Assembly (NCBI RefSeq): GCF_036365525.1
Contig: NW_027140453.1
Coordinates: 1,426,001 to 1,490,000 of the forward strand
Length of the DNA stretch: 64,000 bases
Direction: 5' to 3'
Origin: Heterodontus francisci
Taxonomy: Eukaryota
Part shown: piece after piece, positions 766 through 59,252 of the stretch
Numbering within the stretch: position 1 is the stretch's first letter
Layout of the letters: every line of letters begins with the position of its first letter
The notes under the pieces: generated by a model
Seen by the model: only the letters and a program-made list of their open reading frames with translations
Database searches by the model: none
Told to the model about the DNA's origin: nothing
Translations under genes and position numbers: made by a program

Positions 766-797
<32 letters not shown>

Positions 798-17635: not shown

Positions 17636-17845
17636 CAGACTCCAGGCACAGAAATGCACGGCCGAGTGATCCTCCCACAGGCTGGAGGACTCCAGGTTGA
17701 ACTGGGCGTCAGTCGGTCACTTGGCGCTGAAACCCCCCCCCCCCCCCCCCCCTCCCCCACCGTCCCCTCTGAAATCACACTTGGTACAGCTGGGGAGTAA
17801 AACATTATTTTGAAATAAGACCATGAGACTCAGTAACAGATATAT
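17636..17845 (-). pseudogene. TCR V pseudogene V6 (paralog of V4; intron and 5' half of V deleted)
   Basis: Leader 17845..17809 (ATG->ATA) is fused almost directly to MFYSPAVPSV...; poly-C run at ~17733-17758; in-frame TGA; ends FCAWS. Confidence 0.85.
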
Positions 17846-22499: not shown

Positions 22500-22652
22500 A
22501 CTGCAGTCAATCCGTCGTGGTGTATATAGGAGTTGGAGCTGACACTGAGACTGACACTGTTCACAGCAGAGTGGACCCGAGACTGAGGAGCAAGCAGCTG
22601 GAACTGAACCGACAACATCTCCCACCCAGTGACACCTCCATTGGAGACTCTG
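22500..22652 (+). promoter_or_regulatory. Candidate TATA promoter and non-coding first exon of D8C gene copy 1
   Basis: TATATA 22523-22528 with CAAT just upstream; strong donor TG|GTAAGC at 22653; next acceptor TTCCAG at 23102 precedes the ATG exon; layout conserved in copy 2. Confidence 0.55.
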
Positions 22653-23118
22653 GTAAGCAGTCGGGTATGGGAGGACTGTTAGAAAAAGCAAAGGAGTTTG
22701 TCACTTGCTAGGTATTGACCCAGGGGGTGTGTGTCCTGCTTCTCCTGAAACAACACCATCTCCATGAATAACCTTTGTCAGAAATTCAAAGAGGTTTGTT
22801 TCAGGGATGCAGGAGACAGACCTGGAGGAGAGAGTCAGGAACACATGTGGTTTATTCATAAAAGCTTTGGAGAGTGGAAAGGGTGAAGGATTGGAGTCAA
22901 GTTCCTGATGTTTAACAAGAACATGTAGCTGAGCTCACCTCTGTCTGTAAGAGCCCCAGTGAGAGAGAGATAATTAGATGGAGCTCACCTCTCTAAAACA
23001 GATATACTGACAAACTCCTCGGCAACTCCCTATTTAATATTCCCTCCAATTTCCCTACTCGGTAATCTCTCTCAAATGTTTGTCTTGTGTTTCCCTTTCC
23101 AGAATCTCAGCCAGTAAG

Positions 23119-26100
23119 ATGTGGACTCTGCTGATCATTCTGGGTTACCTGAGTGAGTAACTTTCATTCTCGACAAAGTTCACCCCCAGTACAACTAGAA
23201 CAAGCTGTGTTTATTCAAACCGTTACATAGAATAATCTCCCAAGATGTTGCACAGAAATCTGATTGAAGAAATGTCTGACACACGGCAGGGAAGGAGATG
23301 ATTGGAGGGCTGACTGTTAGTTTAAAAGAGCAGACGGAGGTGGAGAGGCAGAAAGGTTTAGGAGGCCAGACATCTTGAAGCCACATCAGACACTGCTGGA
23401 GGAAAGGGAGTGGAGGGAAGTTCTACAGGAGGCTTGGGTCAGAGAAACAGAGATTTGGTGAAGATTACAGAAATGAGGTGGGAGAGGGCGGGAGAGGTCA
23501 TGAAAGAATTTGAACAGGAAGATGGAAGTTGTACATCAAAGGCGTTTGCAGCTGTGAACCAATGTGGGTCAGAGAGCACAGGGGTGATGTGTGACTTAAA
23601 CTTTCTGCAAGATAACATACAACAGCAGTGTGTTGGAGGAGACCTGACTTCTGGAAAGTGGAAGCTGGGAGGCTGGCCAGGAGTGGATTAGATGATTTGA
23701 TTCTCTAGAAGGTAGAGGGTTTTTGGTAGAGGATTGGCTGAGGCAAAATCAGTGATGGTGGATATTACGGAGGTTGTAATTGGATGCCCTTGTGATGAGG
23801 AGGCTACAGGGAAAGAAGCTGGGCACAGTCGGAAGCTGATGAGAAATTGGAGAGGGACAAGATAGATTCTCGGGGTACCCTAGAGGTAACAGTGCTGGAG
23901 TGGGTAGGGAAGACACTGCAGGAGACTCTCTGGCTGAGACTAGACTGGGTTGAGTGGAAATAGGCCAGAGCAGTTCCACCCAGCTGGACATGGAAGGAGA
24001 GGTGTTGGCAGAGGGTAATGTGGTGAATTGTGTCAAAGACTGCCGACAATTCGAGAAGGATGATCAGAAACAGTATTCCTGACTTGGCTCTTGCAGCTTC
24101 ACTGCTGCTCAAACCCTTTACCAGTTCTTTGGTACCTCTAGACTTGACTATTCCAAAGATCTCCTGGCTGATCTCTCACATTCCACCTTCTGTACATTTT
24201 GGTCATCCAGTATGATACTGCCCAAGTCCCGTTCACCTTTCATCTCTGTGCTCACTGACCTACACTGGCTCCCGGTTCAGCAAGGCCTGGATTTCAATAT
24301 TCTCACAATCGTTTCCAGATCCTTCTATCACCTCGCCGTTCCCTACCTCTGAAATCATCTCCAGCCCCACAACCCTCGGAGATCTCTGCGCTCCTCTAAT
24401 TCAGGCCTCTTGAATATTCCCGATTCGAATCCCTTCCACCATTGGCAGCTGTGCCTTCACCTGCCGAGGCTTAACGCAAGGGAATTCTCTCCCTCAACTT
24501 CTCCGTCTCTCCACCTCTCTTTCATCCTTTCAGACACTCCTTAAAACCTACCTCTTTGACATAGCATTTGGCCACCTGCCCGACCAGCTGCTTCTGTGGA
24601 TCGGTGTCAGTTCGGGATGGTAACACACCGATGAAGTGCTTTGGGACATTTTATTACATCAAAGGCAGTACATAAATGCAGGTTGTTGTTGGTTTTGAGA
24701 CTACACGTTCCCTCTCCAGGACCCACCAGTCACACTGGGTCGCTTGTGCTCCACCTGGCAGTTCTCGCTCCTCCTCCACTTTACACCTTTCCAACTGGGA
24801 TGAAGTGAAGCTGAGATATTTACTGCTTTCTGTTACCTGAGAGCTGGTGGTTAATCTAGAATCGGGAGGACTGTCTGTGAGCAGTGAGTTGGAGGGGGAG
24901 GCTGAGCTGGGAGACAGATGGAAACCCAGTTTAGAGAAGGAGGACATTTTCCATCTTTAATCTGTGGGGCTTTGCCCAGGGCGGAGGGTGAAACTGAGAT
25001 TATTGGTATTTCGGGAGGGTACAAGGCGCTGTGTAACATTAACTGTACTTTATATTAACATTAAACATCTTTCTGTCACTCAGTCACAGACTCCACACTC
25101 ACTGACCCGTGTGTAAATCACACAGTCCTGGACCAGCCCTGGAGGAGCATCGATTGTAATGTCACTGTGGGCTCCGGTCAGGAGAAGTGTGATGATAATC
25201 TTGCTCAAGGATGGTACAGATTTAAAAGGTAATGTAAAGGAACAAATTCTGGGTAAATCAGTTAATGAGGGAGGAGTAAGGGATTTCCCCCAGTTTCTGG
25301 TACTATCTGCTGTTACCAGTCTCTCTAACAGTTAATATTTACCATCAGTTCAGGGACTGACTCTGTGATTATTGTTTCAGTTCTGGTGGATGGAAGATTC
25401 CGGACACTGTTGTCCCAGATTTTCACTGCTCCACACGTGCCACAGGCTGGTTACAGGGTAATTTCCGTCTTTAAAATATCAGATTTACATTCACTGTCCA
25501 GCACTGTTCACGTGGGTTACTTTCTTCAATATTCATAAACTCTCATTTCAGGTTCCCATCCCAGTGTGGGACAGGGGGAAGTAACGAGGACAGTTTGTTT
25601 TAACAAGGCTGGAAATCGCTGTCACTGGACCCAGGAAATAAAGATCAAAAACTGCAGCAGTCATTTTGTTTATGAGTTGAAGCCTCCACCCGACTGTAAC
25701 GCTGCTTATTGTACAGGTAGATTGCTGTTTGTATATGGTGCAGATGGGTGATTCTGGGATGTCCCGTGTCTCCCATAGAAATGAGACAGTTTACTCACTG
25801 CCCTCCTTTTTGTAAGGGACACAGTGAATATAGGATCTGTAAAACAGAGTGAACTCTTCACTAAAACTCTAGGGAACTGAACCAGACGCTCGCTGTCTGG
25901 AGAGAGGGCTGGCATGTCTGGGTAGTATTCTGTCAGGTCTGCAATTGAGGAGATTCAGGTTTTCTGGTGAGTGTCAGACACAGCAGCAGGATCCTGACAG
26001 ACTCTATGTGAAGGGCAGTCACTCTCACCTCACCTCTTGAGTTCAGCTCTTTTGTCCATGTTTGAACCACACTGTAATGAGGTCAGGAGCTGAGTGACCC

Positions 26101-29100
26101 TGGCGGAACCCAAACTGACCATCACTGAACAGGTAATTGCTGAGCAAGTGCCGCTTGATAGCACTGTCAACGACACCTTCCATCATTTTACTGATGATAG
26201 AGAGTAGACTGATGGGACGGTAATTGGGTGGCTTGAACTTGCCCTGCTTTGACTTGTCCTGCTTTTTATGCACAGGACATGCCTGGGCAGTTTTCCACAT
26301 TGCAGGGTAGATGCCAGTGTTGTAGCTGCACTGGAACAGCTTGGCTAAGGATGCAACAAGTTCTGGAGCACAGGTCTTCAGTACTACTTCCGGGATATTG
26401 TCAGGGCCCATAGCCTTTGCAGTATCCAGTGCCTTCAGTCATTTCTTGATATCAAGCGTAGTGAATCGAATTGACTGAAGACTGACATCTGTGATGCTGG
26501 GGATTGCAGGAGAAGGCCGAGATGGATCATCAACTCAGCACTTCTGGCTGAAGATTTTTGCAAATGCTTCAGCCTTATCTTTTGCACTGATGTGCTGGGC
26601 TCCCTGATCATTGAGGATGGGGATATTTGTGGGGCCACCTCCTCCAGTTAGTTGTTTAATTGTCTACTGCCATTCACGACTGGATGTGGCAGGACAAGAA
26701 ATACTGGAATCACTCAGCGGGTCTGGCAGCATCTGTGGAAAGAGAAGCAAAGTTAACGTTTCGGGTCAGCGACCCTTCTTCGGAACTCATTTGATCCGTT
26801 GGTTATGGGATCGCTTAGCTCTGTCCATCGCATGCTAATTATGCTGTTTGGCATGCAGATAGTCCTGTGTTGTAGCTTCACCAGGCTGACACCTCATTTT
26901 GAGGTATGCCTTGTGCTGCACTTTGCATGCCCTCCTGCACTCTTCATGGAACCAGGTTTGGTCTCCTGGCTTGATGGTCATGATCGAGTGGGGGATATAC
27001 CGGACCATGAGGTTACAGATTGTAGTTGAGTACATTCTGCTGCTGCTGTTGTTCCCACAGCACCTCATGGATGCCCATTGTTGTATTGCTAGACTTGTTT
27101 GAATCTATCCCATTTAGCATGGTGATAGTGCCACACAACACGATGGACGGTATCCTCAATGTGAAGGTGGGACTTTGGCTCCACAAGGACTGTGCGGTGG
27201 TCACTCCCACCAAGACTGTCATGGACAGATGGATATGTGGCAGGCAGATTGGTGAGGATGAAGTCAAGTATATTTTCTCCTCTTGTTGGTTCTGTCATCA
27301 CCTACCGCAGTCCCAGACTAGCAGCTTTGTCTTTTAGGACACGGCTAGCTCGGTAAGGAGTGGGCTGCAGTGACTGAGAGGAGTGGTCTGCAGAGACTGA
27401 GGGGAGTGGGATGTAGTGACTGAGCGAATGAGATGCGGTGACTAGGTGGAGTAGGATACAGTGAATGTGGGGAGTGGGATGTAGTGACTGAGGGGAGTGG
27501 GGTGGAGTGACAGGGGAGTGGGAGGTAGTGACTGAGGGGTGTGGGATGCAGTGATTGAGCGGAGTGGGAAGTAGCGACTGAGGGGAGTGGGATACAGAGA
27601 CTGAGGGGAGTGGGATACAGTGACTGAGCGAATGAGATGCGGTGACTAGGTGGAGTAGGATACAGTGAATGTGGGGAGTGGGATGTAGTGACTGAGGGGA
27701 GTGGGATGTAGTGACTGAGGAGAGTGGGGTGTAGTGACAGGGGTGTGGGAAGTAGCGACTGAGGGGAGTGGGATGTAGTGACTGAAGGGAGTGGGGTATA
27801 GTGACTGAGGAGAGTGGGGTGTAGTGACTGAGGAGAGTGGGGTGTAGTGACAGGGGTGTGGGAAGTAGCGACTGAGGGGAGTGGGATACAGAGACTGAGG
27901 GGAGTGGGATACTGTGACTGACGGGAGTGGGATGTAGTGACTAAGGGGAGTGGGATGCTGTAATTGAGGGAAGTGGGATGTAGTGACTACTGAGTGTGAT
28001 GTGGTAACTGAGGGGAGTAGGATGTAGAGAAGCGGGGAGTGAGGTGCAGTGACTGAAGGGAATGGTATAGAGTGATTCGGTGGAGTGGGTACAGTGACAT
28101 AGAGAAGTGGGATGCAGTGATTGAGGGGAGTGGGATGCAGTAATTGAGGGGAGTGGGATGCAGCGACTAAGGGGAGAGGGATGCAGTGACTGAGGGCAGT
28201 GAGATGTAGTGACTGAGGGGAGTGGGATGTAGTGACTGTGGGGAGTGGGATGTAGCGACTGATGGGAGTGGGTGCACTGACTGAGGGGAGTGGGTGCAGT
28301 GAGTGAGGGGAGTGGGATGCTGTAATTGAGGGAAGTGGGTGTAGTGACTGAGGGGAGTGGCATGCAGTGACTCAGGGGAGTGTGATTCAGTGACTGTGGG
28401 GATTGGGATACAGTGACTGTGGGGAGTGGGATACAGTGACTGAGGAGAGTGTGATACGGTAACTGAGGGGAGTGTGATCCCTTCCATTTATCATCACATC
28501 CTCCCCGGTTTCACTTGTCACTAGAACTTTTCCCAGTTCTGATGTAAGGTCACATATTAACATTAAACATCTTTCTGTCACTCAGTCACAGACTCTGCAC
28601 TCACTGACCCGTGTGTAAATCACACAGTCCTGGACCAGCCCTGGAGGAGCAGCGATTGTGATGTCACTGGGTGCTCCGGTCAGGAGAAGTGTGATGATAA
28701 TCTTGCTCAAGGATGGTACAGATTTAAAAGGTAATGTAAAGGAACAAATTCTGGGTAATCTAGTCAATATGGGCAGAGTAAGGGATTTCCCCCAGTTTCT
28801 GGTACTATCTGCTGGTACCAGTCTCTCTAACAGTTAATATTTGCCATCAGTTCAGGGACTGACTCTGTGATTTTTGTTTCAGTTCTGGTGGATGGAAGAT
28901 TCCGGAGACTGCTGTCCCAGATTTTCACTGCTCCACACATGTTACAGGCTGGTTAAATGGTAATTTCAGCCTTGAGAATATCAGATTTACATTCACTGTC
29001 CAGCACTGTTCACATGGGTTACAGTCTTCAATATTTATAAACTCTCATTTCAGGTTCCCATCCCAGCGTGGGACAGGGGGAAGTAACACGGACAGTTTGT

Positions 29101-32100
29101 TTATCCTGGGGTAGAAAACACTGCGACAAGGTCCATGAGATAAAGATCAAAAACTGCAGCAGTTACTTCGTTTATGAGTTGAAGTCCCTGTTTTATTGCG
29201 CTGTGTATTGTACAGGTACATTCATGCTTCTATATCATTCAGAGGCTGATTCTGGGATGTCCCGTGTCACCCACAGAAATGAGACGGTTTACGCACTCCC
29301 CTCCTTATTGTAAGGGACACAGTGAATAAAGGATCTGAAACACAAAGTGTACTTCACTGAAACTCTAGGGAACTGAACCAGACTCTGCTGTCTCTGTCTA
29401 TCAGGCACTCTGATCCCTGCAGTGTTCATGGCTCACGTCAGGTCCCCACTGCAGTGCTGGGCACCTCACACTCCCTCTCCAGGAAACAATGTTGACGAGG
29501 AGTTGGATAGGATCTTCGAGGGTTTGATAAAGATGAAAATCTGACACTGTCTGGACTAGAGAACTAAATAAACGAGCTCTTCGGGTTTTCTCCACTCTGC
29601 CCTCTTCGTTTATTACAGATCCAGAGACTGTCGCAACTGAGGAACCCGAGGAACAAACAACTCGAGAATCCACTGGGGGATCATCGTCTACCCCAGCGGT
29701 GTCTGGAACATCAGGTATCCCCCTTGTGGGGTGCATTCGAAACAGATTCCACACCCAATGTTGCACCATAGAAGATCAGTCCTCGAGATCATCCAGTCTC
29801 TTACTGAGGGAAGTGGGATGGAGTGACTGCGGGAAGTGGAAGGGAGTGAATGAGGGAAGTTGGATGGAGTGACTGAGGGGAGTGGGATGGGGTGACTGAA
29901 GGAAGTGGGATGGAGTGACTGAGGTGAGTGGGATGGGGTGACTGAGGGGAGAGGGATGTGGTGACTGAGGGGACTGGGATGGAGTGACTAAGGAGAGTGG
30001 GATGATGTAATTGAGGGGAGTGGAATACATAGACTGAGGGGAGTGGGAAGTAGTGACTGAGGGGAGTGGGATGTAGTGACTGAGAGGAGTGGGATGCAGT
30101 AATTGAGGGGAGTGGGATGTAGTGACGGAAGGGAGTGGGATGCAGAGGCTGAGGGGATTGGGATGCAGTGACTGGGGAGTGGAATGCACTGATTGAGGGG
30201 TGTGGGATGCAGTGACTGAGGGGAGTGGGATGCAGTGACTGAGGGGAGTGGGATGCACTGATTGAGGGGAGTGGGATGCAGTGACTGAGAGGAGTGGGAT
30301 GCAGTGGCTGAGGGGAGTGGGATGGGGTGACTGAGGAGAGTGGGATGTGGTGATTGAGGGGAGTGGGATGCAGTGACTGAGGGGAGTGGGATGCAGTGAC
30401 TGAGGGGAGTGGGATGATGTAATTGAGCGGAGTGGGATGCAGTAATTGAGGGAAGTGGGATGTAGAGACTGAGTGGAGTGAAATGCACTGATTGAGGGGT
30501 GTGGGATGCACCGATTGAGGGGAGTGGGATGCAGTGACTGAGAGGAGTGGGATGCAGTGGCTGAGGGGAGCGGGTTGCAGTGACTGAGAGGAGTGGGATG
30601 CACTAATTGAGGGGAGAGGGATGCAGTGTCTGAGAGGAGTAGGATGCAGTGGCTGAGGGGTGTGGGTTGCAGTGACTGAGGGGAGTGGGATGTGGTGACT
30701 GAGGGGAGTGGGATGTGGTGACTGAGGAGAGTGGGATGCAGTGACTGAGAGGAATGGGATGGAGGGACTGAGGGGAGTGGCATGATGTAATTGAGGGGAG
30801 TGGGATGCAGTGATTGAGGGGAGTGGGATGATGTAATTGAGTGGTGTGGGATGTCGTGACATGGGCAGTGCGATGCATGGACTGAGTGGAGTGGGATGCA
30901 GTGACTGAGGGAAGTGGGATGCAGTGACTGAGGGGTGTGGGATTTAGAGACTTAGGGGAGTGGGATGTCGAGACTGTGGGGAGTTGAATGTGGTGACTGA
31001 GGGGAGTGGGATGGGGTGACTGAGGGGAGTGGGATGTAGAGTCTGAGGGGAGTGGGATGTAGTGACTGAGGGGAGTGGGATGCAGTGACTGAGGGGAGTG
31101 GGATGATGTAATTAAGGGGAGTGGGATTAAGTGACTGAGGGGAGTGGGATGCATTGACTAAGGGGACTGGGAAGTAATGATTGAGGGCAGTGGGAAGAAG
31201 TGATTAGGGGAGTGGCATGTAGTGGGTGAAGGGAGTGGGAAGTAGTGAGTGAGGGGAGTGGCATGTAGTGAGTGAGGGGAGTGGGATGTAGAGACTGAGA
31301 GGAGTGGGATGCAGTGACTGAGGGGTGTGGGATGTAATGACTGAGGGGAGTGCGATGTAGAGACTGAGGGGAGTGGGATGTACTGGCTGAGGGGAGTGGG
31401 ATGTAGTGACTGAGGGGAGTGGGATGCAGTGACTGAGGGGAGTGGGATGTAATGACTGAGGGGAGTGCGATGTTGAGACTGAGGGGAGTGGGATGTAGAA
31501 ACTGAGGGGAGTGCGATGTAGAGACTGAGGGGAGTGGGATGTAGTGGCTGAGGGGAGTTGGATGCCGTGACTGAGGGGAGTGGGATGGAGAGACTGAGAG
31601 GATTGGGATGTAGTGAATGAGGGGATTTGGATGCCGTGAATGAGGGGAATGGGATGTAGAGAATGAAGGGAGTGCGATGTAGAGACTGAGGGGAGTTGGA
31701 TGCCGTGACCGAGGGGAGTGAGATGTAGAGACTGAGAGGAGTGGGATGAGGTGACTGAGGGGAGTGGGATACAGCGTCTGAGGGTAGTATGATACAGTGA
31801 CTGAGGGGTGTGATACGGTCACTCAGGGAGTGTGATACAGTGACTGAGGGGAGTGTGATACATTGTCTGAGGGTAGTATGATGCAGTCACTGAGGGGTGT
31901 GTGATACAGTCACTCAGGGAGTGTGATACAGTGACTGAGGGGAGTGTGATACAGTGTCTGAGGGTAGTATGATGCAGTCACTGAGGGGAGTGTGATGCAG
32001 CGACTGAGGGTAGTGTGATACAGTGTCTGAGGGGGATGTGATACAGTGACAGAGGGTAGTGTGATACAGTGACTCAGGGAGTGTGATACAGTGACTGAGG

Positions 32101-35100
32101 GGAGTGTGATACAGTTACGGAGGGGAGTGTGATGCACTGACTGAGGTGAGTGGGACACAGTGACTGAAGGGAGTGTGATACAGTGACTGAGGGTAGTTTG
32201 ATACAGTCACTGAGGGGAGTGTGATACAGTGTCTGAGGGGGATGTGATACAGTGACTGAGCGTAGTGTGATACAGAGTCTGAGGGGGATGTGATACAGTG
32301 ACTGAGCGTAGTGTGATACAGAGTCTGAGGGGGATTGTGATACAGTGACTGAGGGTAGTGTGATACAGTGACTGAGGGGGATGTGATACAGTGACTGAGC
32401 GTAGTGTGATACAGAGTCTGAGGGGGATGTGATACAGTGACTGAGGGTAGTGTGATACAATGACAGAGGAAGTGTGATACAGTGACAGAGGGGAGTGTGA
32501 TGCAGTGTGTGAGGGGAGTGTGATGCAGTGACTGAGGGGAGCATGATACAGTGACTGAGGGGTGTGTGATACAGTCACTCAGGGAGTGTGATACAGTGAC
32601 TGAGGGGAGTGTGATACAGTTACGGAGGGGAGTGTGATACACTGACTGAGGGGAGTGGGATACAGTGACTGAAGGGAGTGTGATACAGTGACTGAGGGGT
32701 GTGGGATGCAGTGACTGAGGGGAGTAGGATACAGTCTGTGAGGGGAGTGGGATGCAGCGACTGAGGGTAGTGTGATATAGTGAGTGAGGGGAGTGCGATA
32801 CAGTGTCTGAGGGGAGTGTGATACACTGACTGAGGGGAGCGGGATACAGTGACTGAAGGGAGTGTGATACAGTGACTGAGGGGACTGCGATACAGTGTCT
32901 GAGGGGAGTGTGAGACACTGTCTGAGGGGAGTGGGATACAGTGACTGAGGGGAGTGTGATACACTGTCTGAGGGGAGTGTGAGACACTGTCTGAGGGGAG
33001 TGGGATACGGTGAACTGAAGGGTGTGTGATACAGTGACTGGGGGAGTGTGATACAGTGACTGAGTAGAGTGTGATACACTGTCTGAGGGGAGTGGAATGC
33101 AGTGACTGAAGGGAATATAATGCAGTGACTGAGGGGATTGTGATACAGTGAGCTGAAGGGAGTGCGATGCAGCGACTGAGGAGAGTGTGATACAGCGACT
33201 GACGGGAGTGGGATACAGCGACTGAGGGGAGTGTGATACAGTGACTGAGGGGAATGTGATAAAGTGACTGAGGTGAGTGTAATGCAGTGACTGAGGGGAC
33301 TGTGATAGAGACTGAGGGCAGCATGATGCTCAAACTCAGGAATCCGAGGAACAATTGACTAGAGAATCTACTGAGGTTTCATCCACTACCCACCGGGCTC
33401 TCGAAGCTGAGGTATCTGCTTTGTGGGGTTATCATCGCAGAATCATGGAATCAAAGACTGGTTACGGCACAGAAAGTTTCTGTTCAGCCCATCTACACCG
33501 TGCCAGCTCTCTGGCAGTGCAACTCACCTACTCCCACTCCTGCCATTTTCCTGTCACGCTGCAGATTGTTTCTGCCATGACAATTATCCAATTCCCTTTT
33601 GAAAGCCTCAATTAAACCTGCCTCCAGCACACTCTCATGCAGTGCATTTCAGATCCTAACTACTCACTGTGTGAAAAGGTTTCCCTGTCTCTGTTGTGAC
33701 TTTTACCACTCACCTAAACCCGTTGCTCTCTAGTTCTGAAACAAAAACAAGAAATGCTGGATTCACTCAGCAGGTCTGGCAGCATCTGTGGAAAGAGAAG
33801 CAGAGTTAACGTTTCGGGTCAGTGACCCTTCTTCGGAACTGTCTAGTTCTGGATCCTCCCACCAAGAGGAACAGTTTTTCCCTGACTACTCTGTCCAGTT
33901 CCCTCTTGATTATGAACATCTTGCTCAAATCTCCTCTTAATCTTCTCTTCTCCACGGAGAACAGCCCCAGCTTCTCCGATCTATTCATGTCACTGACGTC
34001 CCTCATCCCGGGAACCATTCTGGTAAATCTTCTCTGCACCCTCTCAAATACCTTAACATACTTCCTAAGTATTGACCACTCTCTCGACCTGTCTTGCCAC
34101 CTTCAATGATTTGTGCACATGTTCCCCCCAGGTCCCTCTGCCCCTGCATCTCCTTTAGAATTGTATCCTTTATTTTATATTGCCTCTCGTTCGTCCGACC
34201 AAAATGAATCACTTCACAATTCTCTGTGATAAATTTCATTTGCCAGTGTCTGCCCATCCCACCAGCCTGTCTATGACCTCCTGACGTCTATCACTGTCCT
34301 CCTCACAGTTCACAATACAACCAGGTTTTGTGTCATCTGCAGAATTTGAAATTGTGCCCTGTACGCCCCAGTCTATGTCATTAATATACATCAGGAAAAA
34401 CAGTGGTCTGAGCAATATTAGAGAGCAAAGCACAGATGCACAGAGAATTAGGAGGGACAGATAACACTGGAGTCGTTAAGAGTATCGTATTAGACGGGGG
34501 CAGTGGAAGAGGAAAGGAGATAAGCTGTCAATTCAGTTTAATGTGTGTGTATATGGATGCACGGAGAGTGGTAAATAAGGTTGTTGAGCTTCAGGCACAG
34601 ATAGCCACGTGGAAATATGATGTTGTGGCAATTACAGGGTCCTGGCTCGAAGATGGGCAGGACTGGGTAGTGAATATTCCTGACGACAAGGTGTTCAGGA
34701 AAGAGAGGGGAGGAAGGAAAGGAGAAGGGGTATCAGTATTGATTAAGGGGAACATTACAGTGCTGTTTTCTTTTCTCTCTCTTGTTCTCACTCATTCCAG
34801 ATCTCCCTCACTCTTTTCTGTCTCACTCCTGTCGCCTACCCTCCTTTTCTCTCATTCCTGCTCTCTGTTGTTCTCTGACTCCACTTTCCCCCTGTCGTTT
34901 CGCTGATCACTTTGATAATCTCCTGAATTTTCTCTGTTAGTTTTTTTTCCTTGTCGGAGTAGTAACTGATTCTGCAGCCGATGATGTCTGGTGTCTCCCC
35001 TCGGTAAAGGCTGGTATACATTGATTCAGTGTGTAGAGGGAGTTAGATTACATACGAGAGGAGGTTCTGTGTTAAAATGCTTCTGTCCACTCATCCAGCG

Positions 35101-36983
35101 TTCTGAATCCCAGTGAAATTCCTCTTGTCTTTATTTGATCCTCTCAGACTCGGGGATTCCGTCTACTCCCGAGGAACCTCCCGACTCCCAGCCTGTTTCT
35201 GATGATGGTGGGAACATTTCAGATTCTCCACATTTCAGGAATATTAAATCCCTCCTCCTGTCTCAGTCTGGCACAAATATATCAGGACCGAGGGCCTCCA
35301 AACAGCTGTGTGATCGTTCTGTGTAGGGAAACCCATCGTTCTCTCTCTCTCTCTCTGCCTTGTCTGTGCTGTCAGACAAGAGTTGCAGTCGCTTGTGTTC
35401 AGTATGAGTGGATACATTGGGAAACACAGAAACGTAAACGTCCAGAAATTCCTTCAGAAATATCTTTGAGCTTCTATCTCACATCCCTCTCTCTGTAACT
35501 CTCAGTTTTATCTCTGTCTCTCTGTTTCTCCTTTAACTGCCTTTCACACGCATATATAAATATATTTCATTTCTGTAACCGCCTCTCTCCTATGTGGCTC
35601 TCAGATTCTCCAGCTCCCTCTTTCACCTCACTCTGTCTCCCACTCTCTCTGATGTTCTGTCTCCCTGTCTGTCTCTCTGACTCTCACTTTCTCTCTCTGT
35701 CTCTCTCACAGATGCTCTTTGTCTGTCTCTCTGTCTTTGTCTTTGTCAGAGGGACAGAGAGCATCAGAGAGAGAGAGAGAGAGTGCGAGTGAGAGACAGA
35801 GACAGAGAAAAGGGCAGTGAGACCGGAGTAAACACGGAATGCAAATGATCTCGGGAGATGGAACAAGAGGCAACGGAGAAGAGAGTGCAGGATAGAGGAT
35901 GATAACACAGGGAGGGCAGATTAGAGAGAAGACGAGTTGAGATAGAGAGAATAACAGAGACAGATGAACAAACGAGTGGATGACAAACTGGAGGAAAGAG
36001 AGTTTAAATTAGAGAGGCGAGATCATTCGAAATACGTCCCGTGCCCTGTGCTAAACTCTGGGTGTGTTCAACCTGTTGATGGTGTGACTGTTGTGTTTAG
36101 ATACCAAATACAAGAGGATTAATGTGAAGATCACTTCAATGACTGATCTGGATGATGAAACTGCAAAGAGAATCGTTGTGGAGAGGGTAAGAGACTGCAC
36201 TGTACTGAGGAGAAACACGGGAGACAACAGATCCTCCCTCTCACTGTCTGTATTCACTGAATGGGAACTCCAGGTCATTATTTAAACAGCTCTAATTCCC
36301 CTCTGCTTATCTTCTGGTCCCCCAGATCAGGCTTGTGAGGGGTTGAATGGGCTTCCTCCTGAGCCTGTGTGAAAGGCTCGAGAGCGGGTGAGGGGGCTGA
36401 ATGGCCTTCTCCTGTTCCTGTGTAAGAACTCGAAAGAGGGGCTGAATGGCCTCCTCCTGTTCCTGTATAACAGACTCGAGGGGATGAATGGCCTCCTCGT
36501 TGGATGGTAATCTCTCTGATCTTCCCTCTCAATCTCCCCATTCTCTCTTTTTGTCCTTTCTATCTCTGTCTCTTTCTCTGCCTCGCTCACCCACTCTGTA
36601 TTTCTCTTTCTTTGTCTTTCTTTCTGTCTGTGTCTGTCTCTCCCTCACTGCATCTCTGACGACCTCTCGCTCTCACGCCATCTGTTTCTCTACCTCTGTC
36701 TCAATCCCTGTAGCTCTCCCACCCTCCCTCTCCATCTCTCCCTCTATCTGAGTATCTTTGCCTCACCCTGTCTCTCACTGTCTTGTCCCCACCCTCTCTC
36801 CCGATCTCTGTCTGTATCCTCTCTGTCTCTTTCTATTCACTCCTCCCCTTGCAGTAATACTCATCGTTTCTCCTCTCTGCGATGCAGATGAAGCACATGT
36901 TCCAGGATCAGTGTCCACACACGAAGCTCGAATTGGATCCAGAAGACGTTCAGTGCTCGGCTAGTGAGCCTGTGGAAGTGTGA
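23119..36983 (+). CDS. Secreted tandem-D8C (uromodulin/GP2/OIT3-like) protein lacking a ZP domain, copy 1, ~380 aa
   Basis: Hand-spliced GT-AG exons with consistent phases: 23119-23152 (MWTLLIILGYL); 25084-25228, 25381-25457, 25552-25716 (D8C-1: DPCVNHTVLDQPWRS...CDDNLAQGWYRFKSSGGWKIPDTVVPDFHCSTRATGWLQGSHPSVGQGEVTRTVC...KIKNCSSHFVYELKPPPDCNAAYCT); 28586-28730, 28883-28959, 29054-29215 (D8C-2); 29619-29714 and 35148-35207 (S/T/P/E stalk); 36101-36186; 36888-36983 (TGA). Total 1143 nt, open. The last three exons are less certain than the D8C exons. Confidence 0.85.
23190..24690. mobile_element. Two L2 LINE fragments in opposite orientation within an intron (paralog 52730-54230)
   Basis: Minus piece encodes ILLELSAVFDTIHH (L2 LDLSAAFDTVDH motif). 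Plus piece has the TSRLDYS region and an L2 tail ending AAATGCAGGTTGTTGTT. Confidence 0.7.
26040..27355 (-). mobile_element. CR1-clade LINE internal EN/RT fragment (paralog 55578-56893)
   Basis: EPTRGENILDFILTN; GPDNIPEVVLKTCAPEL; NYRPISLLSIISK; QFGFRQGHSAPD. Confidence 0.85.
26694..26788 (-). mobile_element. Short Penelope-like terminal-repeat element with minimal hammerhead motif (paralog ~56231-56325)
   Basis: Near-identical to 33739-33841; interrupts the LINE. Confidence 0.6.
27358..28480. repeat. 23-bp G-rich minisatellite (ACTGAGGGGAGTGGGATGCAGTG); paralog 56896-58018
   Basis: Tandem degenerate units in the intron between the D8C modules. Confidence 0.92.
29801..33320. repeat. 23-bp G-rich minisatellite, two sub-arrays (GGGATGCAGTG type, then GTGATACAGTG type)
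   Basis: Variant switch near 31770; source of the long His/Pro/Ser pseudo-ORFs. Confidence 0.95.
33331..33411 (+). pseudogene. Degenerate duplicate of the stalk exon (also at 63007-63087)
   Basis: TQESEEQLTRESTEVSSTT...|GTATCT aligns to exon 29619-29714 (TEEPEEQTTRESTGGSSST...|GTATCC). No usable acceptor; one nucleotide short of phase 1. Confidence 0.6.
33438..34410 (-). mobile_element. CR1 LINE RT/3' fragment (paralog 63114-63970)
   Basis: LFFLMYINDID...SADDTK; QRRFTRMVPGM...EKLGLFS.EKRRLRGDL. Confidence 0.85.
33739..33841 (-). mobile_element. 103-bp Penelope-like insertion with 10-bp target-site duplication and minimal hammerhead motif
   Basis: Flanked by TCTAGTTCTG at 33729-33738 and 33842-33851; empty site in the paralog near 63405-63414. 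Confidence 0.75.
34530..34765 (+). mobile_element. CR1 endonuclease N-terminal fragment
   Basis: CVYMDARRVVNKVVEL...YDVVAITGSWL...FRKERGGRKGEGVSVLIK (APE-type). Confidence 0.75.
36325..36500. repeat. Short tandem array of the CR1 3'-tail motif (GGGCTGAATGGCCTCCTCCTGTTCCTG)
   Basis: About four degenerate units. Confidence 0.65.
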
Positions 36984-37609
36984 AGGAGTTTGGACATGTC
37001 AACAAGCACCCGACACGTGTGATCCAGTCTCTGTGTGTTTTACATCCTCACTCAATCAGTGTACCATCTTATCTTCACCTTGTTTAACTCAAGGAAATTG
37101 TCAGCAAAGGGTTAATCTCCGACTAGAAGTATGCTAATGTTAAACTGTAATTGGTGTGTCTTTATACTGCAGGGATGTGGGAGCTTTAAGCTATTGCTTT
37201 GTTAAATAGAGAAGTACGATCCCATTTGTATACAGTGACCACTGGTCAGCTGAACCCAGACTAACCTGACAGCTCTGGCCACTTTCAGGATGAAGTGATC
37301 TCAGGTTTAATGAGGGAGTTTCTTTAAAGATCTACCATTGAGTAGAGGTCCCGAAGTTTCATGGAGCTGTCAGCACTGAGAATTGGGGCAAGGAAAACAG
37401 TTCGTCCTTGTCCAAGGAGAACCTCAGGGTCGATAACATCTTTTAAATTGAGGGTTCATGCAGAATGGGGGATCGGTTGATGCTGAACTTTGCAGAATCA
37501 AAATATATTGAAAAGGAAAGCTTTCATTGAGTACAAAGCATTTATGTGTGGCATATGTCAAATGTTTAATAACAAAGGAAGGGAGTTGTACTGAGCTCAG
37601 GAACCTAAT

Positions 37610-38145
37610 GCTGACAACACTCCATCTCAATAACACCTCTGTGAATGCTTCCATTGTCTCTGCTCTGCCACACTGCTTGTCTAACATCCAATACTGGATG
37701 AGCAGCTATTTTCTCCTACTAAATATTGGGAAGACTGAAGCCATTGTCTGTGGTCCCCAACACAAATGTCATTCTTGGACCACCGACACCATCTCTGGTA
37801 CCTGTCTGAAACTGATCAAGACAGTTTTCAGCCTTTGTTGTTGTGTTTGACCCCGAGATGAGTTTTCGACCACATTTCCACACCATCACCAAGACTGTCC
37901 ATTTTGCACCTCCATACCATCTCTCGACTCCGCCCCTGCTTCAGCTCATCTGCTGCTGAAACCCTCATCCGTGCCTCTGTTACCTCCAGACTGGACTATT
38001 CCAATACTCTCCTGGCCAAGCTCACATCTTTCACACTTCCTGATCTTATCCTCATACAAACATTTGCTGCCTGTGTCTTAACTCACTCCGAACCCTGTTC
38101 ACCCATAACCCCTGGAACTATTGCCATTCACTGACTCCCTGCTCC
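37610..38145 (+). mobile_element. L2 LINE fragment
   Basis: CLSNIQYWMSSYFLLLNIGKTEAI; SSSAAETLIRASVTSRLDYSNTLLA. Confidence 0.8.
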
Positions 38146-52658: not shown

Positions 52659-55600
52659 ATGTGGACTCTGCTGATCATTCTGGGTTACCTGAGTGAGTAA
52701 CTTTCATTCTCGACAAAGTTCACCCCCAGTACAACTGGAACAAGCTGTGTTTATTCAAACCGTTATATAGAATAATCTCCCAAGATGTTGCACAGAAATC
52801 TGATGGAAGAAATGTCTGACAGGGCAGGGAAGGAGATGATTGGAGGGCTAACTGTTAGTTTAAAAGAGCAGACGGAGGTGGAGAGGCAGAAAGGTTTAGG
52901 AGGCTGGACATCTTGCAGCCACATCAGACACTGCTGGAGGAAAGGGAGTGGAGGGAAGTTCTACAGGAGGCTTGGGTCAGAGAAACAGAGAGTTGGTGAA
53001 GATTACAGAAATGAGGTGGGAGAGGGTGGAGAGGTCATGAAAGAATTTGAACAGGAAGATGGAAGTTGTACATCAAAGGCGTTTGCAGCTGTGAACCAAT
53101 GTGGGTCAGAGAGCACAGGGGTGATGTGTGACTTAAACTTTCTGCAAGATAACATACAACAGCAGTGTGTTGGAGGAGACCTGACTTCTGGAAAGTGGAA
53201 GCTGGGAGGCTGGCCAGGAGTGGATTAGAAGATTTGATTCTCCAGAAGGTAGAGGGTTTTTGGTAGAGGATTGGCTGAGGCAAAATCAGTGATGGTGGAT
53301 ATTACGGAGGTTGTAATTGGATGCCCTTGTGATGAGGAGGCGACAGGGAAGGAAGCTGGGCACAGTCGGAAGCTGATGAGAAATTGGAGAGGGACAAGAT
53401 AGATTCTCGGGGTACCATAGAGGTAACAGTGCTGGAGTGGGTAGGGAAGACACTGCAGGAGATTCTCTGGCTGAGACTAGACTGGGTAGAGTGGAAATAG
53501 GCCAGAGCAGTTCCACCCAGCTGGACATGGAAGGAGTGGTGTTGGCGATGGATAGTGTGGTGAATTGTGTCAAAGACTGCCGACAATTCGGGAAGGATGA
53601 TCAGAAACAGTATTCCTGACTTGGCTCTTGCAGCTTCACTGCTGCTCAAACACTTTACCAGTTCTTTGGTAACTCTAGACTTGACTATTCCAAAGACCTC
53701 CTGGCTGATCTCTCACATTCCACCTTCTGTACATTTTGGTCATCCAGTATGATACTGCCCAAGTCCCGTTCACCTTTCATCTCCGTGCTCACTGACCTGC
53801 ACTGGCTCCCGGTTCAGCAAGGCCTGGATTTCAATATTCTCACAATCGTTTCCAGATCCTTCTATCACCTCGCCGTTCCCTACCTCTGAAATCATCTCCA
53901 GCCCCACAACCCTCGGAGATCTCTGCGCTCCTCTAATTCAGGCCTCTTGAATATTCCCGATTCGAATCCCTTCCACCATTGGCAGCTGTGCCTTCACCTG
54001 CCGAGGCTTAACGCAAGGGAATTCTCTCCCTCAACTTCTCCGTCTCTCCACCTCTCTTTCATCCTTTCAGACACTCCTTAAAACCTACCTCTTTGACATA
54101 GCATTTGGCCACCTGCCCGACCAGCTGCTTCTGTGGATCGGTGTCAGTTCGGGATGGTAACACACCGATGAAGTGCTTTGGGACATTTTATTACATCAAA
54201 GGCAGTACATAAACGCAGGTTGTTGTTGGTTTTGAGACTACACGTTCCCTCTCCAGGACCCACCAGTCACACTGGGTCGCTTGTGCTCCACCTGGCAGTT
54301 CTCGCTCCTCCTCCACTTTACATCTTTCCTACTGGGATGAAGTGAAGCTGAGATATTTACTGCTTTCTGTTACCTGAGAGCTGGTGGTTAATCTAGAATC
54401 GGGAGGACTGTCTGTGAGCAGTGAGTTGGAGGGGGAGGCTGAGCTGGGAGACAGATGGAAACCCAGTTTAGAGAAGGAGGACATTTTCCAGCTTTAATCT
54501 GGGGAGTTTTGACCAGGGCGGAGGGTGAAACTGAGATTATTGGTATTTTGGGAGGGTACAAGGCGCTGTTTAACATTAACTGTACTTTATATTAACATTA
54601 AACATCTTTCTGTCACTCAGTCACAGACTCCACACTCACTGACCCGTGTGTAAATCACACAGTCCTGGACCAGCCCTGGAGGAGCATCGATTGTGATGTC
54701 ACTGTGGGCTCCGGTCAGGAGAAGTGTGATGATAATCTTGCTCAAGGATGGTACAGATTTAAAAGGTAATGTAAAGGAACAAATTCTGGCTAAATCAGTT
54801 AATGAGGGAGGAGTAATGGATTTCCCCCAGTTTCTGGCACTATCTGTTGTTACCAGTCTCTCTAACAGTTAATATTTACCATCAGTTCAGGGACTGACTC
54901 TGTGATTATTGTTTCAGTTCTGGTGGATGGAAGATTCCGGACACTGTTGTCCCAGATTTTCACTGCTCCACACGTGCCACAGGCTGGTTACAGGGTAATT
55001 TCAGCCTTTATAATATCAGATTTACATTCACTGTCCAGCACTGTTCACGTGGGTGACTTTCTTCAATATTTATAAACTCTCATTTCAGGTTCCCATCCCA
55101 GTGTGGGACAGGGGGAAGTAACGAGGACAGTTTGTTTTAACAAGGCTGGAAATCGCTGTCACTGGACCCAGGAAATAAAGATCAAAAACTGCAGCAGTTA
55201 TTTTGTTTATGAGTTGAAGCCTCCACCCGACTGTAACGCTGCTTATTGTACAGGTAGATTGCTGTTTGTATATGGTGCAGATGGGTGATTCTGGGATGTC
55301 CCGTGTCTCCCATAGAAATGAGACAGTTTACTCACTGCCCTCCTTTTTGTAAGGGACACAGTGAATATAGGATCTGTAAAACAGAGTGAACTCTTCACTA
55401 AAACTCTAGGGAACTGAACCAGACGCTCGCTGTCTGGAGAGAGGGCTGGCATGTCTGGGTAGTATTCTGTCAGGTCTGCAATTGAGGAGATTCAGGTTTT
55501 CTGGTGAGTGTCAGACACAGCAGCAGGATCCTGACAGACTCTATGTGAAGGGCAGTCACTCTCACCTCACCTCTTGAGTTCAGCTCTTTTGTCCATGTTT

Positions 55601-58600: not shown

Positions 58601-59252
58601 CCAGCGTGGGACAGGGGGAAGTAACACGGACAGTTTGTTTATCCTGGGGTAGAAAACACTGCGACAAGGTCCATGAGATAAAGATCAAAAACTGCAGCAG
58701 TTACTTCGTTTATGAGTTGAAGTCCCTGTTTTATTGCGCTGCGTATTGTACAGGTACATTCATGCTTCTATATCATCCAGAGGGTGATTCTGGGATGTCC
58801 CGTGTCACCCACAGAAATGAGACGGTTTACTCACTCCCCTCCTTATTGTAAGGGACACAGTGAATAAAGGATCTGAAACACAAAGTGTGCTTCACTGAAA
58901 CTCTAGGGAACTGAACCAGACTCTGCTGTCTCTGTCTATCAGGCACTCTGATCCCTGCAGTGTTCATGGCTCACGTCAGGTCCCCACTGCAGTGCTGGGC
59001 ACCTCACACTCCCTCTCCAGGAAGCAATGTTCACGAGGAGTTGGATAGGATCTTCGAGGGTTTGATAAAGATGAAAATCTGACACTGTCTGGACTAGAGA
59101 ACTATATAAACGAGCTCTTCGGGTTTTCTCCACTCTGCCCTCTTCCTTTATTACAGATCCAGAGACTGTCGCAACTGAGGAACCCGAGGAACAAACAACT
59201 CGACAATCCACTAGGGGATCATCGTCTACCCCAGCGGTGTCTGGAACATCAG
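52659..59252 (+). CDS. Secreted tandem-D8C protein, copy 2 (3' exons beyond window end)
   Basis: Exons 52659-52692, 54621-54765, 54918-54994, 55089-55253, 58124-58268, 58421-58497, 58592-58753, 59157-59252. Open, splice sites intact, a handful of substitutions versus copy 1 (N>D, H>Y, T>I, V>A, E>Q, G>R). Confidence 0.85.

What the first reader, a model, noticed from the sequence alone, without database searches (positions are those of the whole stretch)
23119..36983. Novel architecture: secreted double-D8C protein with mucin-like stalk, no ZP module and no anchor
Seen: 11 phase-compatible coding exons give signal peptide + D8C + D8C + S/T/P/E stalk + ~60-aa tail, with no hydrophobic C-terminus. 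Established: UMOD, GP2 and OIT3 have one D8C/D10C upstream of EGF and ZP modules. In GP2 the N65 glycan in DPCQNYT binds bacterial FimH. Both domains here keep that sequon (DPCVNHT) and lack the UMOD N275-type sequon (YNLT is YELK here). Inference: a stand-alone bivalent soluble decoy or microbial-binding protein that cannot polymerise through ZP.
Basis: partly seen in the sequence, partly recalled or inferred. Interest (0 to 1): 0.82.

Follow-up and report, generated by a model that had tools for sequence, protein, structure and literature searches.

The report
Shark ZP-less double-D10C secreted gene
This is a real, spliced horn-shark-type gene for a secreted protein with two uromodulin/GP2-type heads, a short acidic stalk and a small conserved tail but no filament-forming or anchoring part; it is one more copy of a large shark-and-ray family that databases already predict and nobody has studied.

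Summary
On the + strand, exons with canonical AG/GT sites and matching phases run from an ATG at 23119 to a TGA at 36981-36983. They encode a signal peptide, two D8C/D10C domains, a 32-aa acidic Ser/Thr stalk exon and a ~59-aa tail, with no ZP module, EGF domain or hydrophobic end.

- **Database match:** a RefSeq "uncharacterized protein" of Heterodontus francisci (P0161, 360 aa) matches exon by exon at about 98%.
- **RNA support:** public contigs show the last intron spliced (36186→36888). They run unspliced past the stop for over 850 bases and do not cover the skipped exon.
- **Decayed exon:** a stalk exon at 33317-33411 is 95 nt, one short of the 96-nt repeat unit. Including it would shift the frame, so it must be skipped.
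- **Second copy:** a tandem copy of the gene starts at 52659.

About 95 relatives with D8C only were found, mostly in 17 or more shark and ray species. This scan has already met the family several times on other DNA of this genome. The GP2 N65-type sequon is present in both heads. However, the β-hairpin that forms the glycan groove in GP2/UMOD is absent, and only about 37% of family domains keep the sequon. Function remains inferred.

The parts
23119..23152 (+). Exon 1: ATG and signal-peptide core (MWTLLIILGYL), ends in phase 1
   Evidence: Donor GT; 11/11 identical to P0161 residues 1-11. A second copy of the exon lies at 52659.
25084..25228 (+). Exon 2: D10C#1 part A (DPCVNHT…GWYRFK), phase 1 to 2
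   Evidence: AG/GT; 46/47 identical to P0161. Aligns to GP2 DPCQNYT…GWYRF.
25381..25457 (+). Exon 3: D10C#1 part B (SSGGWKIPDTVVPDFHCST…); V stands at the C3 position
   Evidence: AG/GT; 25/25 identical to P0161. The C3 position is never Cys in 145 family domains.
25552..25716 (+). Exon 4: D10C#1 part C, phase 1 to 1
   Evidence: Pfam PF23283, E 6.7e-9, 36.3 bits. phmmer found 1182 relatives.
28586..28730 (+). Exon 5: D10C#2 part A (DPCVNHT…)
   Evidence: AG/GT; 47/47 identical to P0161.
28883..28959 (+). Exon 6: D10C#2 part B
   Evidence: AG/GT; 25/25 identical to P0161.
29054..29215 (+). Exon 7: D10C#2 part C
   Evidence: Pfam PF23283, E 4.4e-5; 52/53 identical to P0161.
29619..29714 (+). 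Exon 8: 96-nt acidic Ser/Thr stalk exon (DPETVATEEPEEQTTRESTGGSSSTPAVSGTS), phase 1 to 1
   Evidence: AG/GT; 30/31 identical to P0161. The same 32-aa unit is repeated 4-5 times in paralogues P0010 and P0167.
33317..33411 (+). Relic stalk exon: 95 nt instead of 96, with a purine-rich acceptor inside the minisatellite. Inclusion shifts the frame.
   Evidence: tblastn shows a frame change and a stop relative to P0010. Inclusion gives a premature stop. No RNA depth over 33319-33518.
35148..35207 (+). Optional 60-nt exon (DSGIPSTPEEPPDSQPVSDD), phase 1 to 1
   Evidence: AG/GT. 100% match to P0010 residues 393-413. Absent from P0161. RNA depth is 0 in three runs.
36101..36186 (+). Tail exon 1 (TKYKRINVKITSMTDLDDETAKRIVVER)
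   Evidence: 28/28 identical to P0161. RNA contigs cover 36099/36106-36186 with 0 differences.
36888..36983 (+). Tail exon 2, coding part, with stop TGA at 36981-36983
   Evidence: Splice joint 36185/6→36887/8, GT..AG, in runs X1 (depth 85) and X2 (9.8). 31/31 identical to P0161.
36984..37958 (+). 3' UTR, contiguous with the last coding exon
   Evidence: Contigs 36887-37130, 37101-37747, 36887-37747 and 37720-37958 carry no onward joint; about 1.2% of letters differ.
27357..28478 (.). 23-bp G-rich minisatellite (49 copies) in the intron between the two D10C modules
   Evidence: TRF. Stops in all + frames.
29803..33318 (.). 23-bp minisatellite (153 copies) in the intron after the stalk exon. 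Its long minus-strand ORFs come from the repeat itself.
   Evidence: TRF; ORF list.
52659..59252 (+). Second tandem gene copy. Exons: 52659-52692, 54621-54765, 54918-54994, 55089-55253, 58124-58268, 58421-58497, 58592-58753, 59157-59252. Its tail lies beyond the window.
   Evidence: Segmental duplication 19658-33317 ↔ 49185-62834 at 92.4%. Modules are 97-100% identical. Exon ends located.

Best explanation
**Shown.** The stretch holds an intact, spliced gene of a shark/ray-wide family. A second copy lies 29.5 kb downstream. The protein is 360 aa (380 aa with a cassette exon) and consists of:
- a cleavable-looking signal peptide;
- two tandem D10C (D8C) domains of the GP2/uromodulin fold that lack the C3-C6 disulfide;
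- one 32-aa acidic Ser/Thr/Pro/Glu linker exon;
- a family-specific ~45-aa strand-helix-strand tail that carries cysteines.

It has no β-hairpin, EGF domain, ZP module, transmembrane segment or GPI signal.

**Inferred.** The protein is released as a soluble glycoprotein into a secretion or body fluid. It cannot form ZP filaments. It presents two (more if the Cys-bearing tail joins chains) D10C heads. The heads would bind microbial or other ligands through their N-glycans (N23 and N152 in DPCVNHT; N-C-S before C8) and/or through the variable loops around the lost disulfide. In short, it would be a soluble multivalent binder or decoy of the innate, mucosal-defence type, comparable in purpose to UMOD, GP2 and the zebrafish omcins but built differently.
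For: **Gene model**
- Canonical sites and phases, with a single terminal stop.
- Exon-by-exon identity of 91-100% (about 98% overall) to RefSeq protein P0161 of Heterodontus francisci.
- P0010 (XP_067884563.1) has the same order of parts.

**RNA**
- The GT..AG joint 36186→36888 appears in two runs.
- Contigs run contiguously past the stop to about 37958.
- In one contig the letters upstream of 36101 end in AG, as a stalk exon does.

**Fold**
- AlphaFold model of P0161: pLDDT about 90 in both heads, below 50 in the stalk, 68-86 in the tail.
- Foldseek matches the GP2 decoy module 7P6R/S/T at E about 2e-14, rmsd 1.4-1.6 Å over 126-132 residues, 39-40% identity.
- phmmer against PDB: E 1e-24.

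**Family**
- 95 relatives at E ≤ 1e-5. All with a Pfam record carry PF23283, and only two frog uromodulins have ZP.
- The tail is conserved in 31 fetched proteins from sharks, rays and skates.
- No hydrophobic C-terminus in any of 90 family proteins.

**Constraint**
- The two gene copies are 97-100% identical across the D10C modules, against 92.4% over the whole duplicated block.

**Analogy**
- Zebrafish omcins are multi-D10C proteins in a tandem cluster and confer resistance to bacteria (PMC11415648).
Against: - No tissue, protein, glycan or binding data exist for any member. No paper on the family was found.
- The RNA contigs differ from the window at about 1.2% of 3' UTR positions. They may therefore come from an allele or from another near-identical copy, not this one.
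- Reads were laid only on 33319-39300, so the upstream junctions rest on similarity to RefSeq models.
- The runs are labelled only 'RNA? (a guess)', although a GT..AG joint at the predicted exon ends argues for RNA.
- Signal-peptide and GPI calls are by inspection. No predictor was available.
- The hairpin that shields the high-mannose glycan in GP2/UMOD is missing.
- The tail's role in joining chains is pure inference.
Confidence: 0.55

Rival explanations
1. One reading: a bivalent, soluble FimH-type decoy. Each head would present a high-mannose N-glycan at the GP2 N65-equivalent Asn, which bacterial mannose-binding fimbrial lectins would bind.
For: - Both heads carry DPCVNHT, which aligns with GP2 DPCQNYT.
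- In GP2, N65 carries oligomannose and the N65A change impairs FimH binding (PMC8930769).
- The D10C fold is kept.
Against: - In GP2/UMOD the glycan sits in the groove between the β-hairpin and D10C, and that setting is thought to keep it high-mannose.
- Here only 7 residues precede each DPC, so there is no hairpin.
- Even GP2 N65 also carries complex glycans, because it is more exposed.
- Only 57 of 153 family DPC motifs keep the sequon. Close paralogues have DPCVHHT or DPCVDHT.
Confidence: 0.2
2. A decaying or silent duplicate. On this view the open frame is young and unconstrained, and the RNA comes from another copy.
For: - A relic stalk exon with a 1-nt loss.
- Minisatellites of 1.1 and 3.5 kb and LINE pieces in the introns.
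- D10C#1 has an odd number of cysteines.
- The RNA contigs differ at about 1.2% in the UTR.
Against: - All 10-11 exons are open with canonical splice sites.
- The RNA contigs show 0 differences over both tail exons' coding parts.
- Exons are at least as conserved between the two copies as the surrounding DNA.
- The same features, including the V-for-C change in the first loop, occur in RefSeq model P0161.
Confidence: 0.1
3. An accessory subunit that docks on other proteins' filaments or matrices, for example ZP-module polymers, rather than binding microbes. D10C would act as a protein-protein module.
For: - In UMOD filaments D10C contacts the C-terminus of a neighbouring subunit's ZP-C and is the Bence-Jones protein epitope (PMC8930769).
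- The most variable family columns lie in that βE/loop/βF stretch.
Against: - No partner is known.
- The large copy number, the varying number of heads and the placement in a TCR V array fit a defence family better than a structural one.
Confidence: 0.1

Closest known systems
Human GP2 and uromodulin (UMOD) decoy module (PDB 7P6R/7P6S/7P6T, 7PFP, 7Q3N)
   Same: - Same D10C fold: Foldseek E about 2e-14, rmsd 1.4-1.6 Å, 39-40% identity.
- Shared motifs DPC, GWYRF, WL.G.HP and YCT.
- The GP2 N65-type sequon is present.
   Different: - No β-hairpin, EGF IV, ZP-N/ZP-C, consensus cleavage or GPI signal, so no filament.
- The C3-C6 disulfide is lost.
- Two heads in tandem.
- The UMOD N275 sequon is absent.
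- A new C-terminal tail.
Zebrafish omcins (zgc:153932/omc5 family; PMC11415648)
   Same: - A variable number of tandem D10C domains.
- A tandem gene cluster with lineage-specific expansion.
- A proposed antibacterial role.
   Different: Omcins keep EGF IV, the ZP module and a predicted GPI anchor. The shark family has none of these and has an acidic stalk plus tail instead.
RefSeq-predicted elasmobranch proteins, e.g. XP_067884563.1 (P0010) and P0161 of Heterodontus francisci, XP_041038352.1 'uromodulin-like' of Carcharodon carcharias, XP_043533706.1 'GP2-like' of Chiloscyllium
   Same: - Same order of parts and same exon logic.
- Same SSGGWKIP motif and same tail.
- P0161 is about 98% identical exon by exon.
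   Different: - The number of heads varies from 1 to 4.
- The number of 32-aa stalk units varies from 0 to 5 or more.
- All are automatic predictions without a name or study.
OIT3/LZP and VWDE (other D10C-bearing vertebrate proteins)
   Same: They share the D10C domain (PMC8930769 alignment legend).
   Different: OIT3 has EGF and ZP. VWDE has VWD and EGF arrays. Neither has tandem D10C with a stalk and this tail.

Membership tests
D8C/D10C domain (Pfam PF23283, UMOD/GP2/OIT3-like) | Profile match above the curated cut-off | tested here: met
   Exon 25552-25716 scores 36.3 bits against a cut-off of 27. The D8C#2 exon alone scores 24 bits. Proxy P0161 scores 75 bits with two stretches.
D8C/D10C domain (Pfam PF23283, UMOD/GP2/OIT3-like) | D10C fold as in the GP2 crystal structures | tested here: met
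   Tested on proxy P0161, about 98% identical to the window's exons. pLDDT is about 90 in both heads. 7P6R/S/T match at E about 2e-14, rmsd 1.4-1.6 Å.
D8C/D10C domain (Pfam PF23283, UMOD/GP2/OIT3-like) | Ten conserved cysteines forming C1-C8, C2-C9, C3-C6, C4-C10 and C5-C7 | tested here: not met
   C3 is V or A (PDTVVP, PETAVP) and C6 is R or H (NRCH, KHCD) in the alignment to GP2. C3 is absent in all 145 family domains counted. Eight canonical cysteines remain, plus 1 extra in head 1 and 2 extra in head 2.
GP2/UMOD bipartite 'decoy module' | Disulfide-stapled β-hairpin packed against D10C, forming the glycan groove | tested here: not met
   Only ITDSTLT (head 1) or VTDSALT (head 2) precedes DPC. 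The module is defined in PMC8930769.
GP2/UMOD bipartite 'decoy module' | N-glycan sequon at the GP2 N65 or UMOD N275 position | tested here: met
   An N65-type N-H-T sequon is present in both heads. The N275 position is E. Family-wide the N65-type sequon occurs in 57 of 153 motifs.
GP2/UMOD bipartite 'decoy module' | High-mannose glycan bound by FimH | not testable with these tools
   Needs glycoproteomics and binding assays.
ZP-module filament proteins (UMOD, GP2, OIT3, omcins) | ZP-N and ZP-C domains, preceded by EGF | tested here: not met
   No Pfam ZP or EGF hit in P0161, P0010 or 35 relatives. The transcript ends at TGA 36981-83 with a contiguous UTR.
ZP-module filament proteins (UMOD, GP2, OIT3, omcins) | C-terminal hydrophobic anchor (GPI signal or TM) | tested here: not met
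   The C-terminus …DPEDVQCSASEPVEV is hydrophilic. None of 90 family proteins has a hydrophobic run in its last 45 aa. No GPI predictor was available.
Mucins / mucin-like stalk proteins | Long Pro/Thr/Ser-rich tandem-repeat region | tested here: not met
   This copy has one 32-aa unit with 12 Ser/Thr and a modelled disordered stretch at residues 274-302. Paralogues have 4-5 units or more. O-glycosylation is untested.
Elasmobranch D10C-stalk-tail family (unnamed; RefSeq 'uncharacterized protein') | Signal peptide, D10C with the SSGGWKIP motif and without C3-C6, 96-nt phase-1 stalk exons, and a conserved C-terminal strand-helix-strand tail | tested here: met

The most novel reading that the evidence does not exclude
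Elasmobranchs replaced ZP polymerisation with a different route to multivalency. Tandem D10C heads sit on exon-amplified stalks and are joined through a new Cys-bearing C-terminal tail. The whole family is amplified together with T-cell-receptor V segments and diversified in the loops freed by loss of the C3-C6 disulfide. That would make it a germline-diversified family of soluble recognition molecules, not mere glycan decoys.
Probability: 0.2. Interest if true: 0.7.

Novelty: new variant of a known kind. Interest (0 to 1): 0.4.

Why it matters
D10C is known almost only as the 'branch' of ZP filaments (UMOD, GP2, omcins) that traps fimbriated bacteria. An old, widespread vertebrate family uses the same head without the filament, without the hairpin and with one disulfide fewer. 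That gives a natural experiment on what D10C does by itself: glycan presentation or direct binding. It also shows how multivalency can be reached by other means. The family's placement and co-duplication inside T-cell-receptor V arrays is an unusual genomic pairing worth noting for anyone studying shark immune loci. For this particular stretch the gain is modest. It is one more copy of a family that RefSeq already predicts and that this scan has already reported.

Tried and rejected
- **Minus-strand ORFs at 27941-33354 (up to 353 aa):** rejected as coding. They are read-through of a 23-bp minisatellite; 3 × 23 nt gives a 23-aa repeat.
- **One gene with four D10C heads spanning both duplicated units:** rejected. 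Each unit has its own ATG/signal exon (23119 and 52659), and transcripts end after 36983.
- **Stalk exon 33317-33411 as part of the mRNA:** rejected. It is 95 nt and gives a premature stop, and it has no RNA depth.
- **Positive selection as the cause of the divergent third exon of the two heads:** not upheld for the exon as a whole. dS is 0.58 there, against 0.035-0.06 in exons A and B, so the other parts were homogenised and exon C is simply older. Only the C5-C7 loop has dN 0.52 above dS 0.30, on 16 codons.
- **Tail domain identity:** no Pfam family even at E ≤ 5 across 37 members, and nothing usable from the ESM Atlas.
- **Literature:** four searches found no study of the family, and the catshark genome paper does not mention it.
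- **Joined model:** Exons were searched by reference, and database protein P0161 served as proxy. Exons were joined only inside scripts, to check length, phase and stops and to print the translation of the first eight exons.
Full report
**What is in the sequence.** The window is vertebrate DNA of about 46% G+C, rich in LINE pieces and minisatellites. On the + strand between 23119 and 36983 I traced the exon chain by eye and by script. Every exon has AG/GT borders, and the phases fit.

| Exon | Coordinates | Content |
|---|---|---|
| 1 | 23119-23152 | ATG, MWTLLIILGYL |
| 2-4 | 25084-25228, 25381-25457, 25552-25716 | First D8C module |
| 5-7 | 28586-28730, 28883-28959, 29054-29215 | Second D8C module |
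| 8 | 29619-29714 | 96-nt acidic Ser/Thr exon |
| (9) | 35148-35207 | 60-nt exon |
| 10-11 | 36101-36186, 36888-36983 | Tail, ending in TGA |

The 11-exon chain is 1143 nt and the 10-exon chain is 1083 nt. Each has one stop, at the end. Each D8C module begins and ends in phase 1, as does the stalk exon. That is the classic layout of shuffled and duplicated extracellular modules.

Pfam's D8C_UMOD model hits the third exon of each module when exons are searched one by one by reference (E 6.7e-9 and 4.4e-5). Exons were joined only inside scripts, to check length, phase and stops and to print the translation of the first eight exons.

**Independent support for the model.** A phmmer search with the third exon of head 1 against 1.84 billion representatives gave 1182 hits, many with 2-17 D8C stretches. 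The closest are RefSeq predictions from the horn shark Heterodontus francisci.
- P0010 (XP_067884563.1, 472 aa) has the same order of parts, with four to five 32-aa stalk units.
- P0161 (360 aa) matches the window's exons 11/11, 46/47, 25/25, 49/54, 47/47, 25/25, 52/53, 30/31, 28/28 and 31/31.

P0161 joins the stalk exon directly to the tail (…SGTS|DTKYKRINV).

The window is therefore from this species or a very close one, and holds a near-identical paralogue or allele of P0161.

**RNA.** Three small public runs of one sample held 13%, 9% and 4% of the sampled words of 25052-29720, roughly the exon share of that stretch. They are labelled only 'RNA? (a guess)'.
- Two runs show a GT..AG joint from 36185/6 to 36887/8, exactly the predicted last intron.
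- The contigs have no differences over either tail exon.
- They run on without a joint through the stop to 37747, and further to 37958. The terminal exon therefore carries a 3' UTR of more than 850 nt, and nothing splices on to ZP or membrane exons.
- The bin 35119-35318, which holds the 60-nt exon, has depth 0 in all three runs. The relic exon region 33319-33518 also has depth 0.
- One 340-nt contig has 252 further letters upstream of 36099 that lie nowhere on the stretch. Its two letters before 36101 are AG, as at the end of a stalk exon (…TCAG) and unlike the 60-nt exon (…GATG). This agrees with P0161's junction.

Caveats apply. The UTR contigs differ from the window at 10 of 861 places, so they may come from an allele or another near-identical copy. 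The upstream junctions were not tested with reads. A weak alternative joint, 36270→36885 at depth 6, was also seen.

**The relic exon and the minisatellites.** A stretch at 33317-33411 resembles the stalk unit (…QTQESEEQLTRESTEVSS…). It is 95 nt rather than 96, its acceptor lies in purine-rich minisatellite DNA, and it changes frame and meets a stop relative to P0010. Including it gives a premature stop. The same defect is present in the second gene copy at 63004-63122.

Two 23-bp G-rich minisatellites fill the introns after each D8C module: 49 copies at 27357-28478 and 153 copies at 29803-33318. Their minus strand reads as open frames of up to 353 aa, which are artefacts of the repeat.

**Duplication and setting.** The block 19658-33317 recurs at 49185-62834 with 92.4% identity. 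The second copy has its own ATG exon at 52659 and all exons through the stalk, so there are two tandem genes, not one four-headed gene.

Across the D8C modules the two genes are 97-100% identical. Within a gene, heads 1 and 2 compare as follows:

| Region | Nucleotide identity | dS |
|---|---|---|
| Exon A | 96% | 0.035 |
| Exon B | 91% | 0.06 |
| Introns between them | 91-93% | n/a |
| Exon C | 79% | 0.58 |

The pattern points to gene conversion over the 5' two-thirds of the module and an older exon C, not to exon-wide positive selection. Only the 16-codon loop between C5 and C7 has dN (0.52) above dS (0.30).

Upstream on the minus strand lie V-set segments ending in YYCAAS or YYCAWS, at 396-905 and 4794-5477 (Pfam V-set). 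Similar ones lie at 8280-8600 and 12304-12609. Earlier notes of this scan place the T-cell-receptor β locus here. The D8C genes therefore sit among, and were duplicated with, TCR V segments.

**Fold and comparison with GP2/UMOD.** I used P0161 as proxy, with a 37-sequence family alignment.
- AlphaFold2 gives both heads a pLDDT of about 90. The stalk (residues 274-302) is below 50, and the tail scores 68-86 with one long helix at 319-337.
- Foldseek finds the GP2 decoy module crystals and UMOD at E 2e-14 to 6e-12, rmsd 1.4-1.8 Å over about 126-132 residues, 39-40% identity. Nothing else scores below E 0.05.
- phmmer against PDB sequences gives E 1e-24.

DPCVNHT aligns with GP2 DPCQNYT (N65). 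The UMOD N275 / GP2 R165 position is E in YFVYELK.

It also shows that C3 (GP2 SETC) is V or A, and that one Cys of the CC pair (C6) is R or H. By the pairing given in PMC8930769 (C3-C6), exactly one disulfide has been lost. In 90 family proteins the C3 position is never Cys (0 of 145 domains).

Head 2 has two extra cysteines (SDC…TGC). Head 1 has only one (IDC…TVG), which leaves an odd count.

**Why the decoy reading is weaker than it looks.** PMC8930769 defines the decoy module as a disulfide-stapled β-hairpin packed on D10C. [quoted passage not shown] Even so, the more exposed GP2 N65 also carries complex glycans.

Here only seven residues separate the signal peptide, or the previous head, from DPC, so the hairpin and the groove are absent. 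Across the family only 57 of 153 DPC motifs are followed by the sequon, and the close paralogue P0010 has DPCVHHT in head 2. An N-C-[ST] sequon before C8 is commoner, at 99 of 146.

The most variable columns over 130 family domains are the loop before C2, the stretch after the C3 position, and the C5-C7 loop. The C5-C7 loop is the region that in UMOD binds Bence-Jones proteins and a neighbour's ZP-C end.

So the heads may bind through protein loops as much as through glycans. That is inference, not a shown result.

**The tail.** The last ~59 aa (TKYKRINVKITS–MTDLDDETAKRIVVERMKHMFQDQ–CPHTKLELDPEDVQC…) form a strand-helix-strand pattern. It recurs in 31 of the 223 proteins fetched, from sharks, rays and skates, always after D10C heads. 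It therefore predates the shark-ray split.

No Pfam family matches it, even at E ≤ 5 across 37 members. The Atlas look-up gave only chance-level rows.

Many members keep a single Cys near the C-terminus, and this copy has two. A two-strand unit is unlikely to be stable alone. I therefore infer that the tail pairs chains, possibly covalently.

**Distribution and novelty.** The word search with P0010 returned 95 proteins at E ≤ 1e-5.
- Almost all are from 17 or more elasmobranch species, with a few from characiform fishes.
- They are labelled 'uncharacterized', 'uromodulin-like', 'GP2-like', 'OIT3-like' or 'mucin-5AC-like'.
- They carry PF23283 alone. Only two frog uromodulins at the bottom of the list have EGF and ZP.
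- By contrast, the coral and loach multi-D8C proteins found by phmmer keep ZP.
- Zebrafish omcins have several D10C plus EGF, ZP and a predicted GPI anchor (PMC11415648).

No paper on the shark family was found. The build is thus absent from the literature searched but already present in public annotation. This scan has reported it at least six times on other pieces of the same genome, with the same conclusions.

**Verdict.** The protein is secreted, ZP-less, anchorless and two-headed. 'Novel' holds only relative to the literature, and the FimH-decoy mechanism lacks a defining part of the known module. The most likely function is a soluble multivalent binder of the innate or mucosal defence type. 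The anatomy is shown; the function is inferred.

Noticed in passing
window 396-905 (-), 4794-5477 (-), 8280-8600 (-), 12304-12609 (-): T-cell-receptor V-like segments (…YYCAWS, …YYCAAS) lie on the opposite strand to the D8C genes. The D8C genes therefore sit inside a TCR V array and were duplicated with it. The first two segments have Pfam V-set hits.
   Followed up: partly
window 19658-33317 and 49185-62834; also 7895-12245 ↔ 13411-17502, 17805-20083 ↔ 46399-48729: A tandem segmental duplication of about 29.5 kb at 92.4% identity, plus a shorter unit of about 5.5 kb repeated upstream.
   Followed up: partly
window 25552-25716 vs 29054-29215: The third exon of the two heads is far more diverged (79% nt identity, dS 0.58) than exons A and B and the introns (91-96%, dS 0.035-0.06). 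This is a mosaic best explained by gene conversion sparing exon C. Only the C5-C7 loop shows dN above dS.
   Followed up: yes
window 27941-33354 (-): The long minus-strand ORFs (SHSPQSLHPTPL…, up to 353 aa) are artefacts of a 23-bp minisatellite read in three frames.
   Followed up: yes
window 33719-33918, 36319-36518, 38919-39118: Very high summed contig depth in the RNA-like runs (up to about 4×10^5) marks short interspersed repeats that are abundant in transcripts. They are not part of the gene.
   Followed up: no
window 36187-36270: A weak alternative joint, 36270→36885 (depth about 6, one run, two differing letters), suggests a minor alternative donor after tail exon 1 or a paralogue's transcript.
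   Followed up: no
P0164 and P0157 (RefSeq models of Heterodontus francisci): These models run from stalk or tail exons into interspersed-repeat ORFs, for example …LHTISRLRPC…SSAAETLIR…, which also occurs at window 37862-38131. They are probable annotation errors.
   Followed up: partly
window 26043-26411 (-), 40251-42259 (+): Fragments of LINE reverse-transcriptase ORFs lie in the intron between the heads and in the intergenic region.
   Followed up: no
window 19656-20083 and 48275-49460: A 37-bp G-rich tandem repeat sits at the start of each duplicated block.
   Followed up: no
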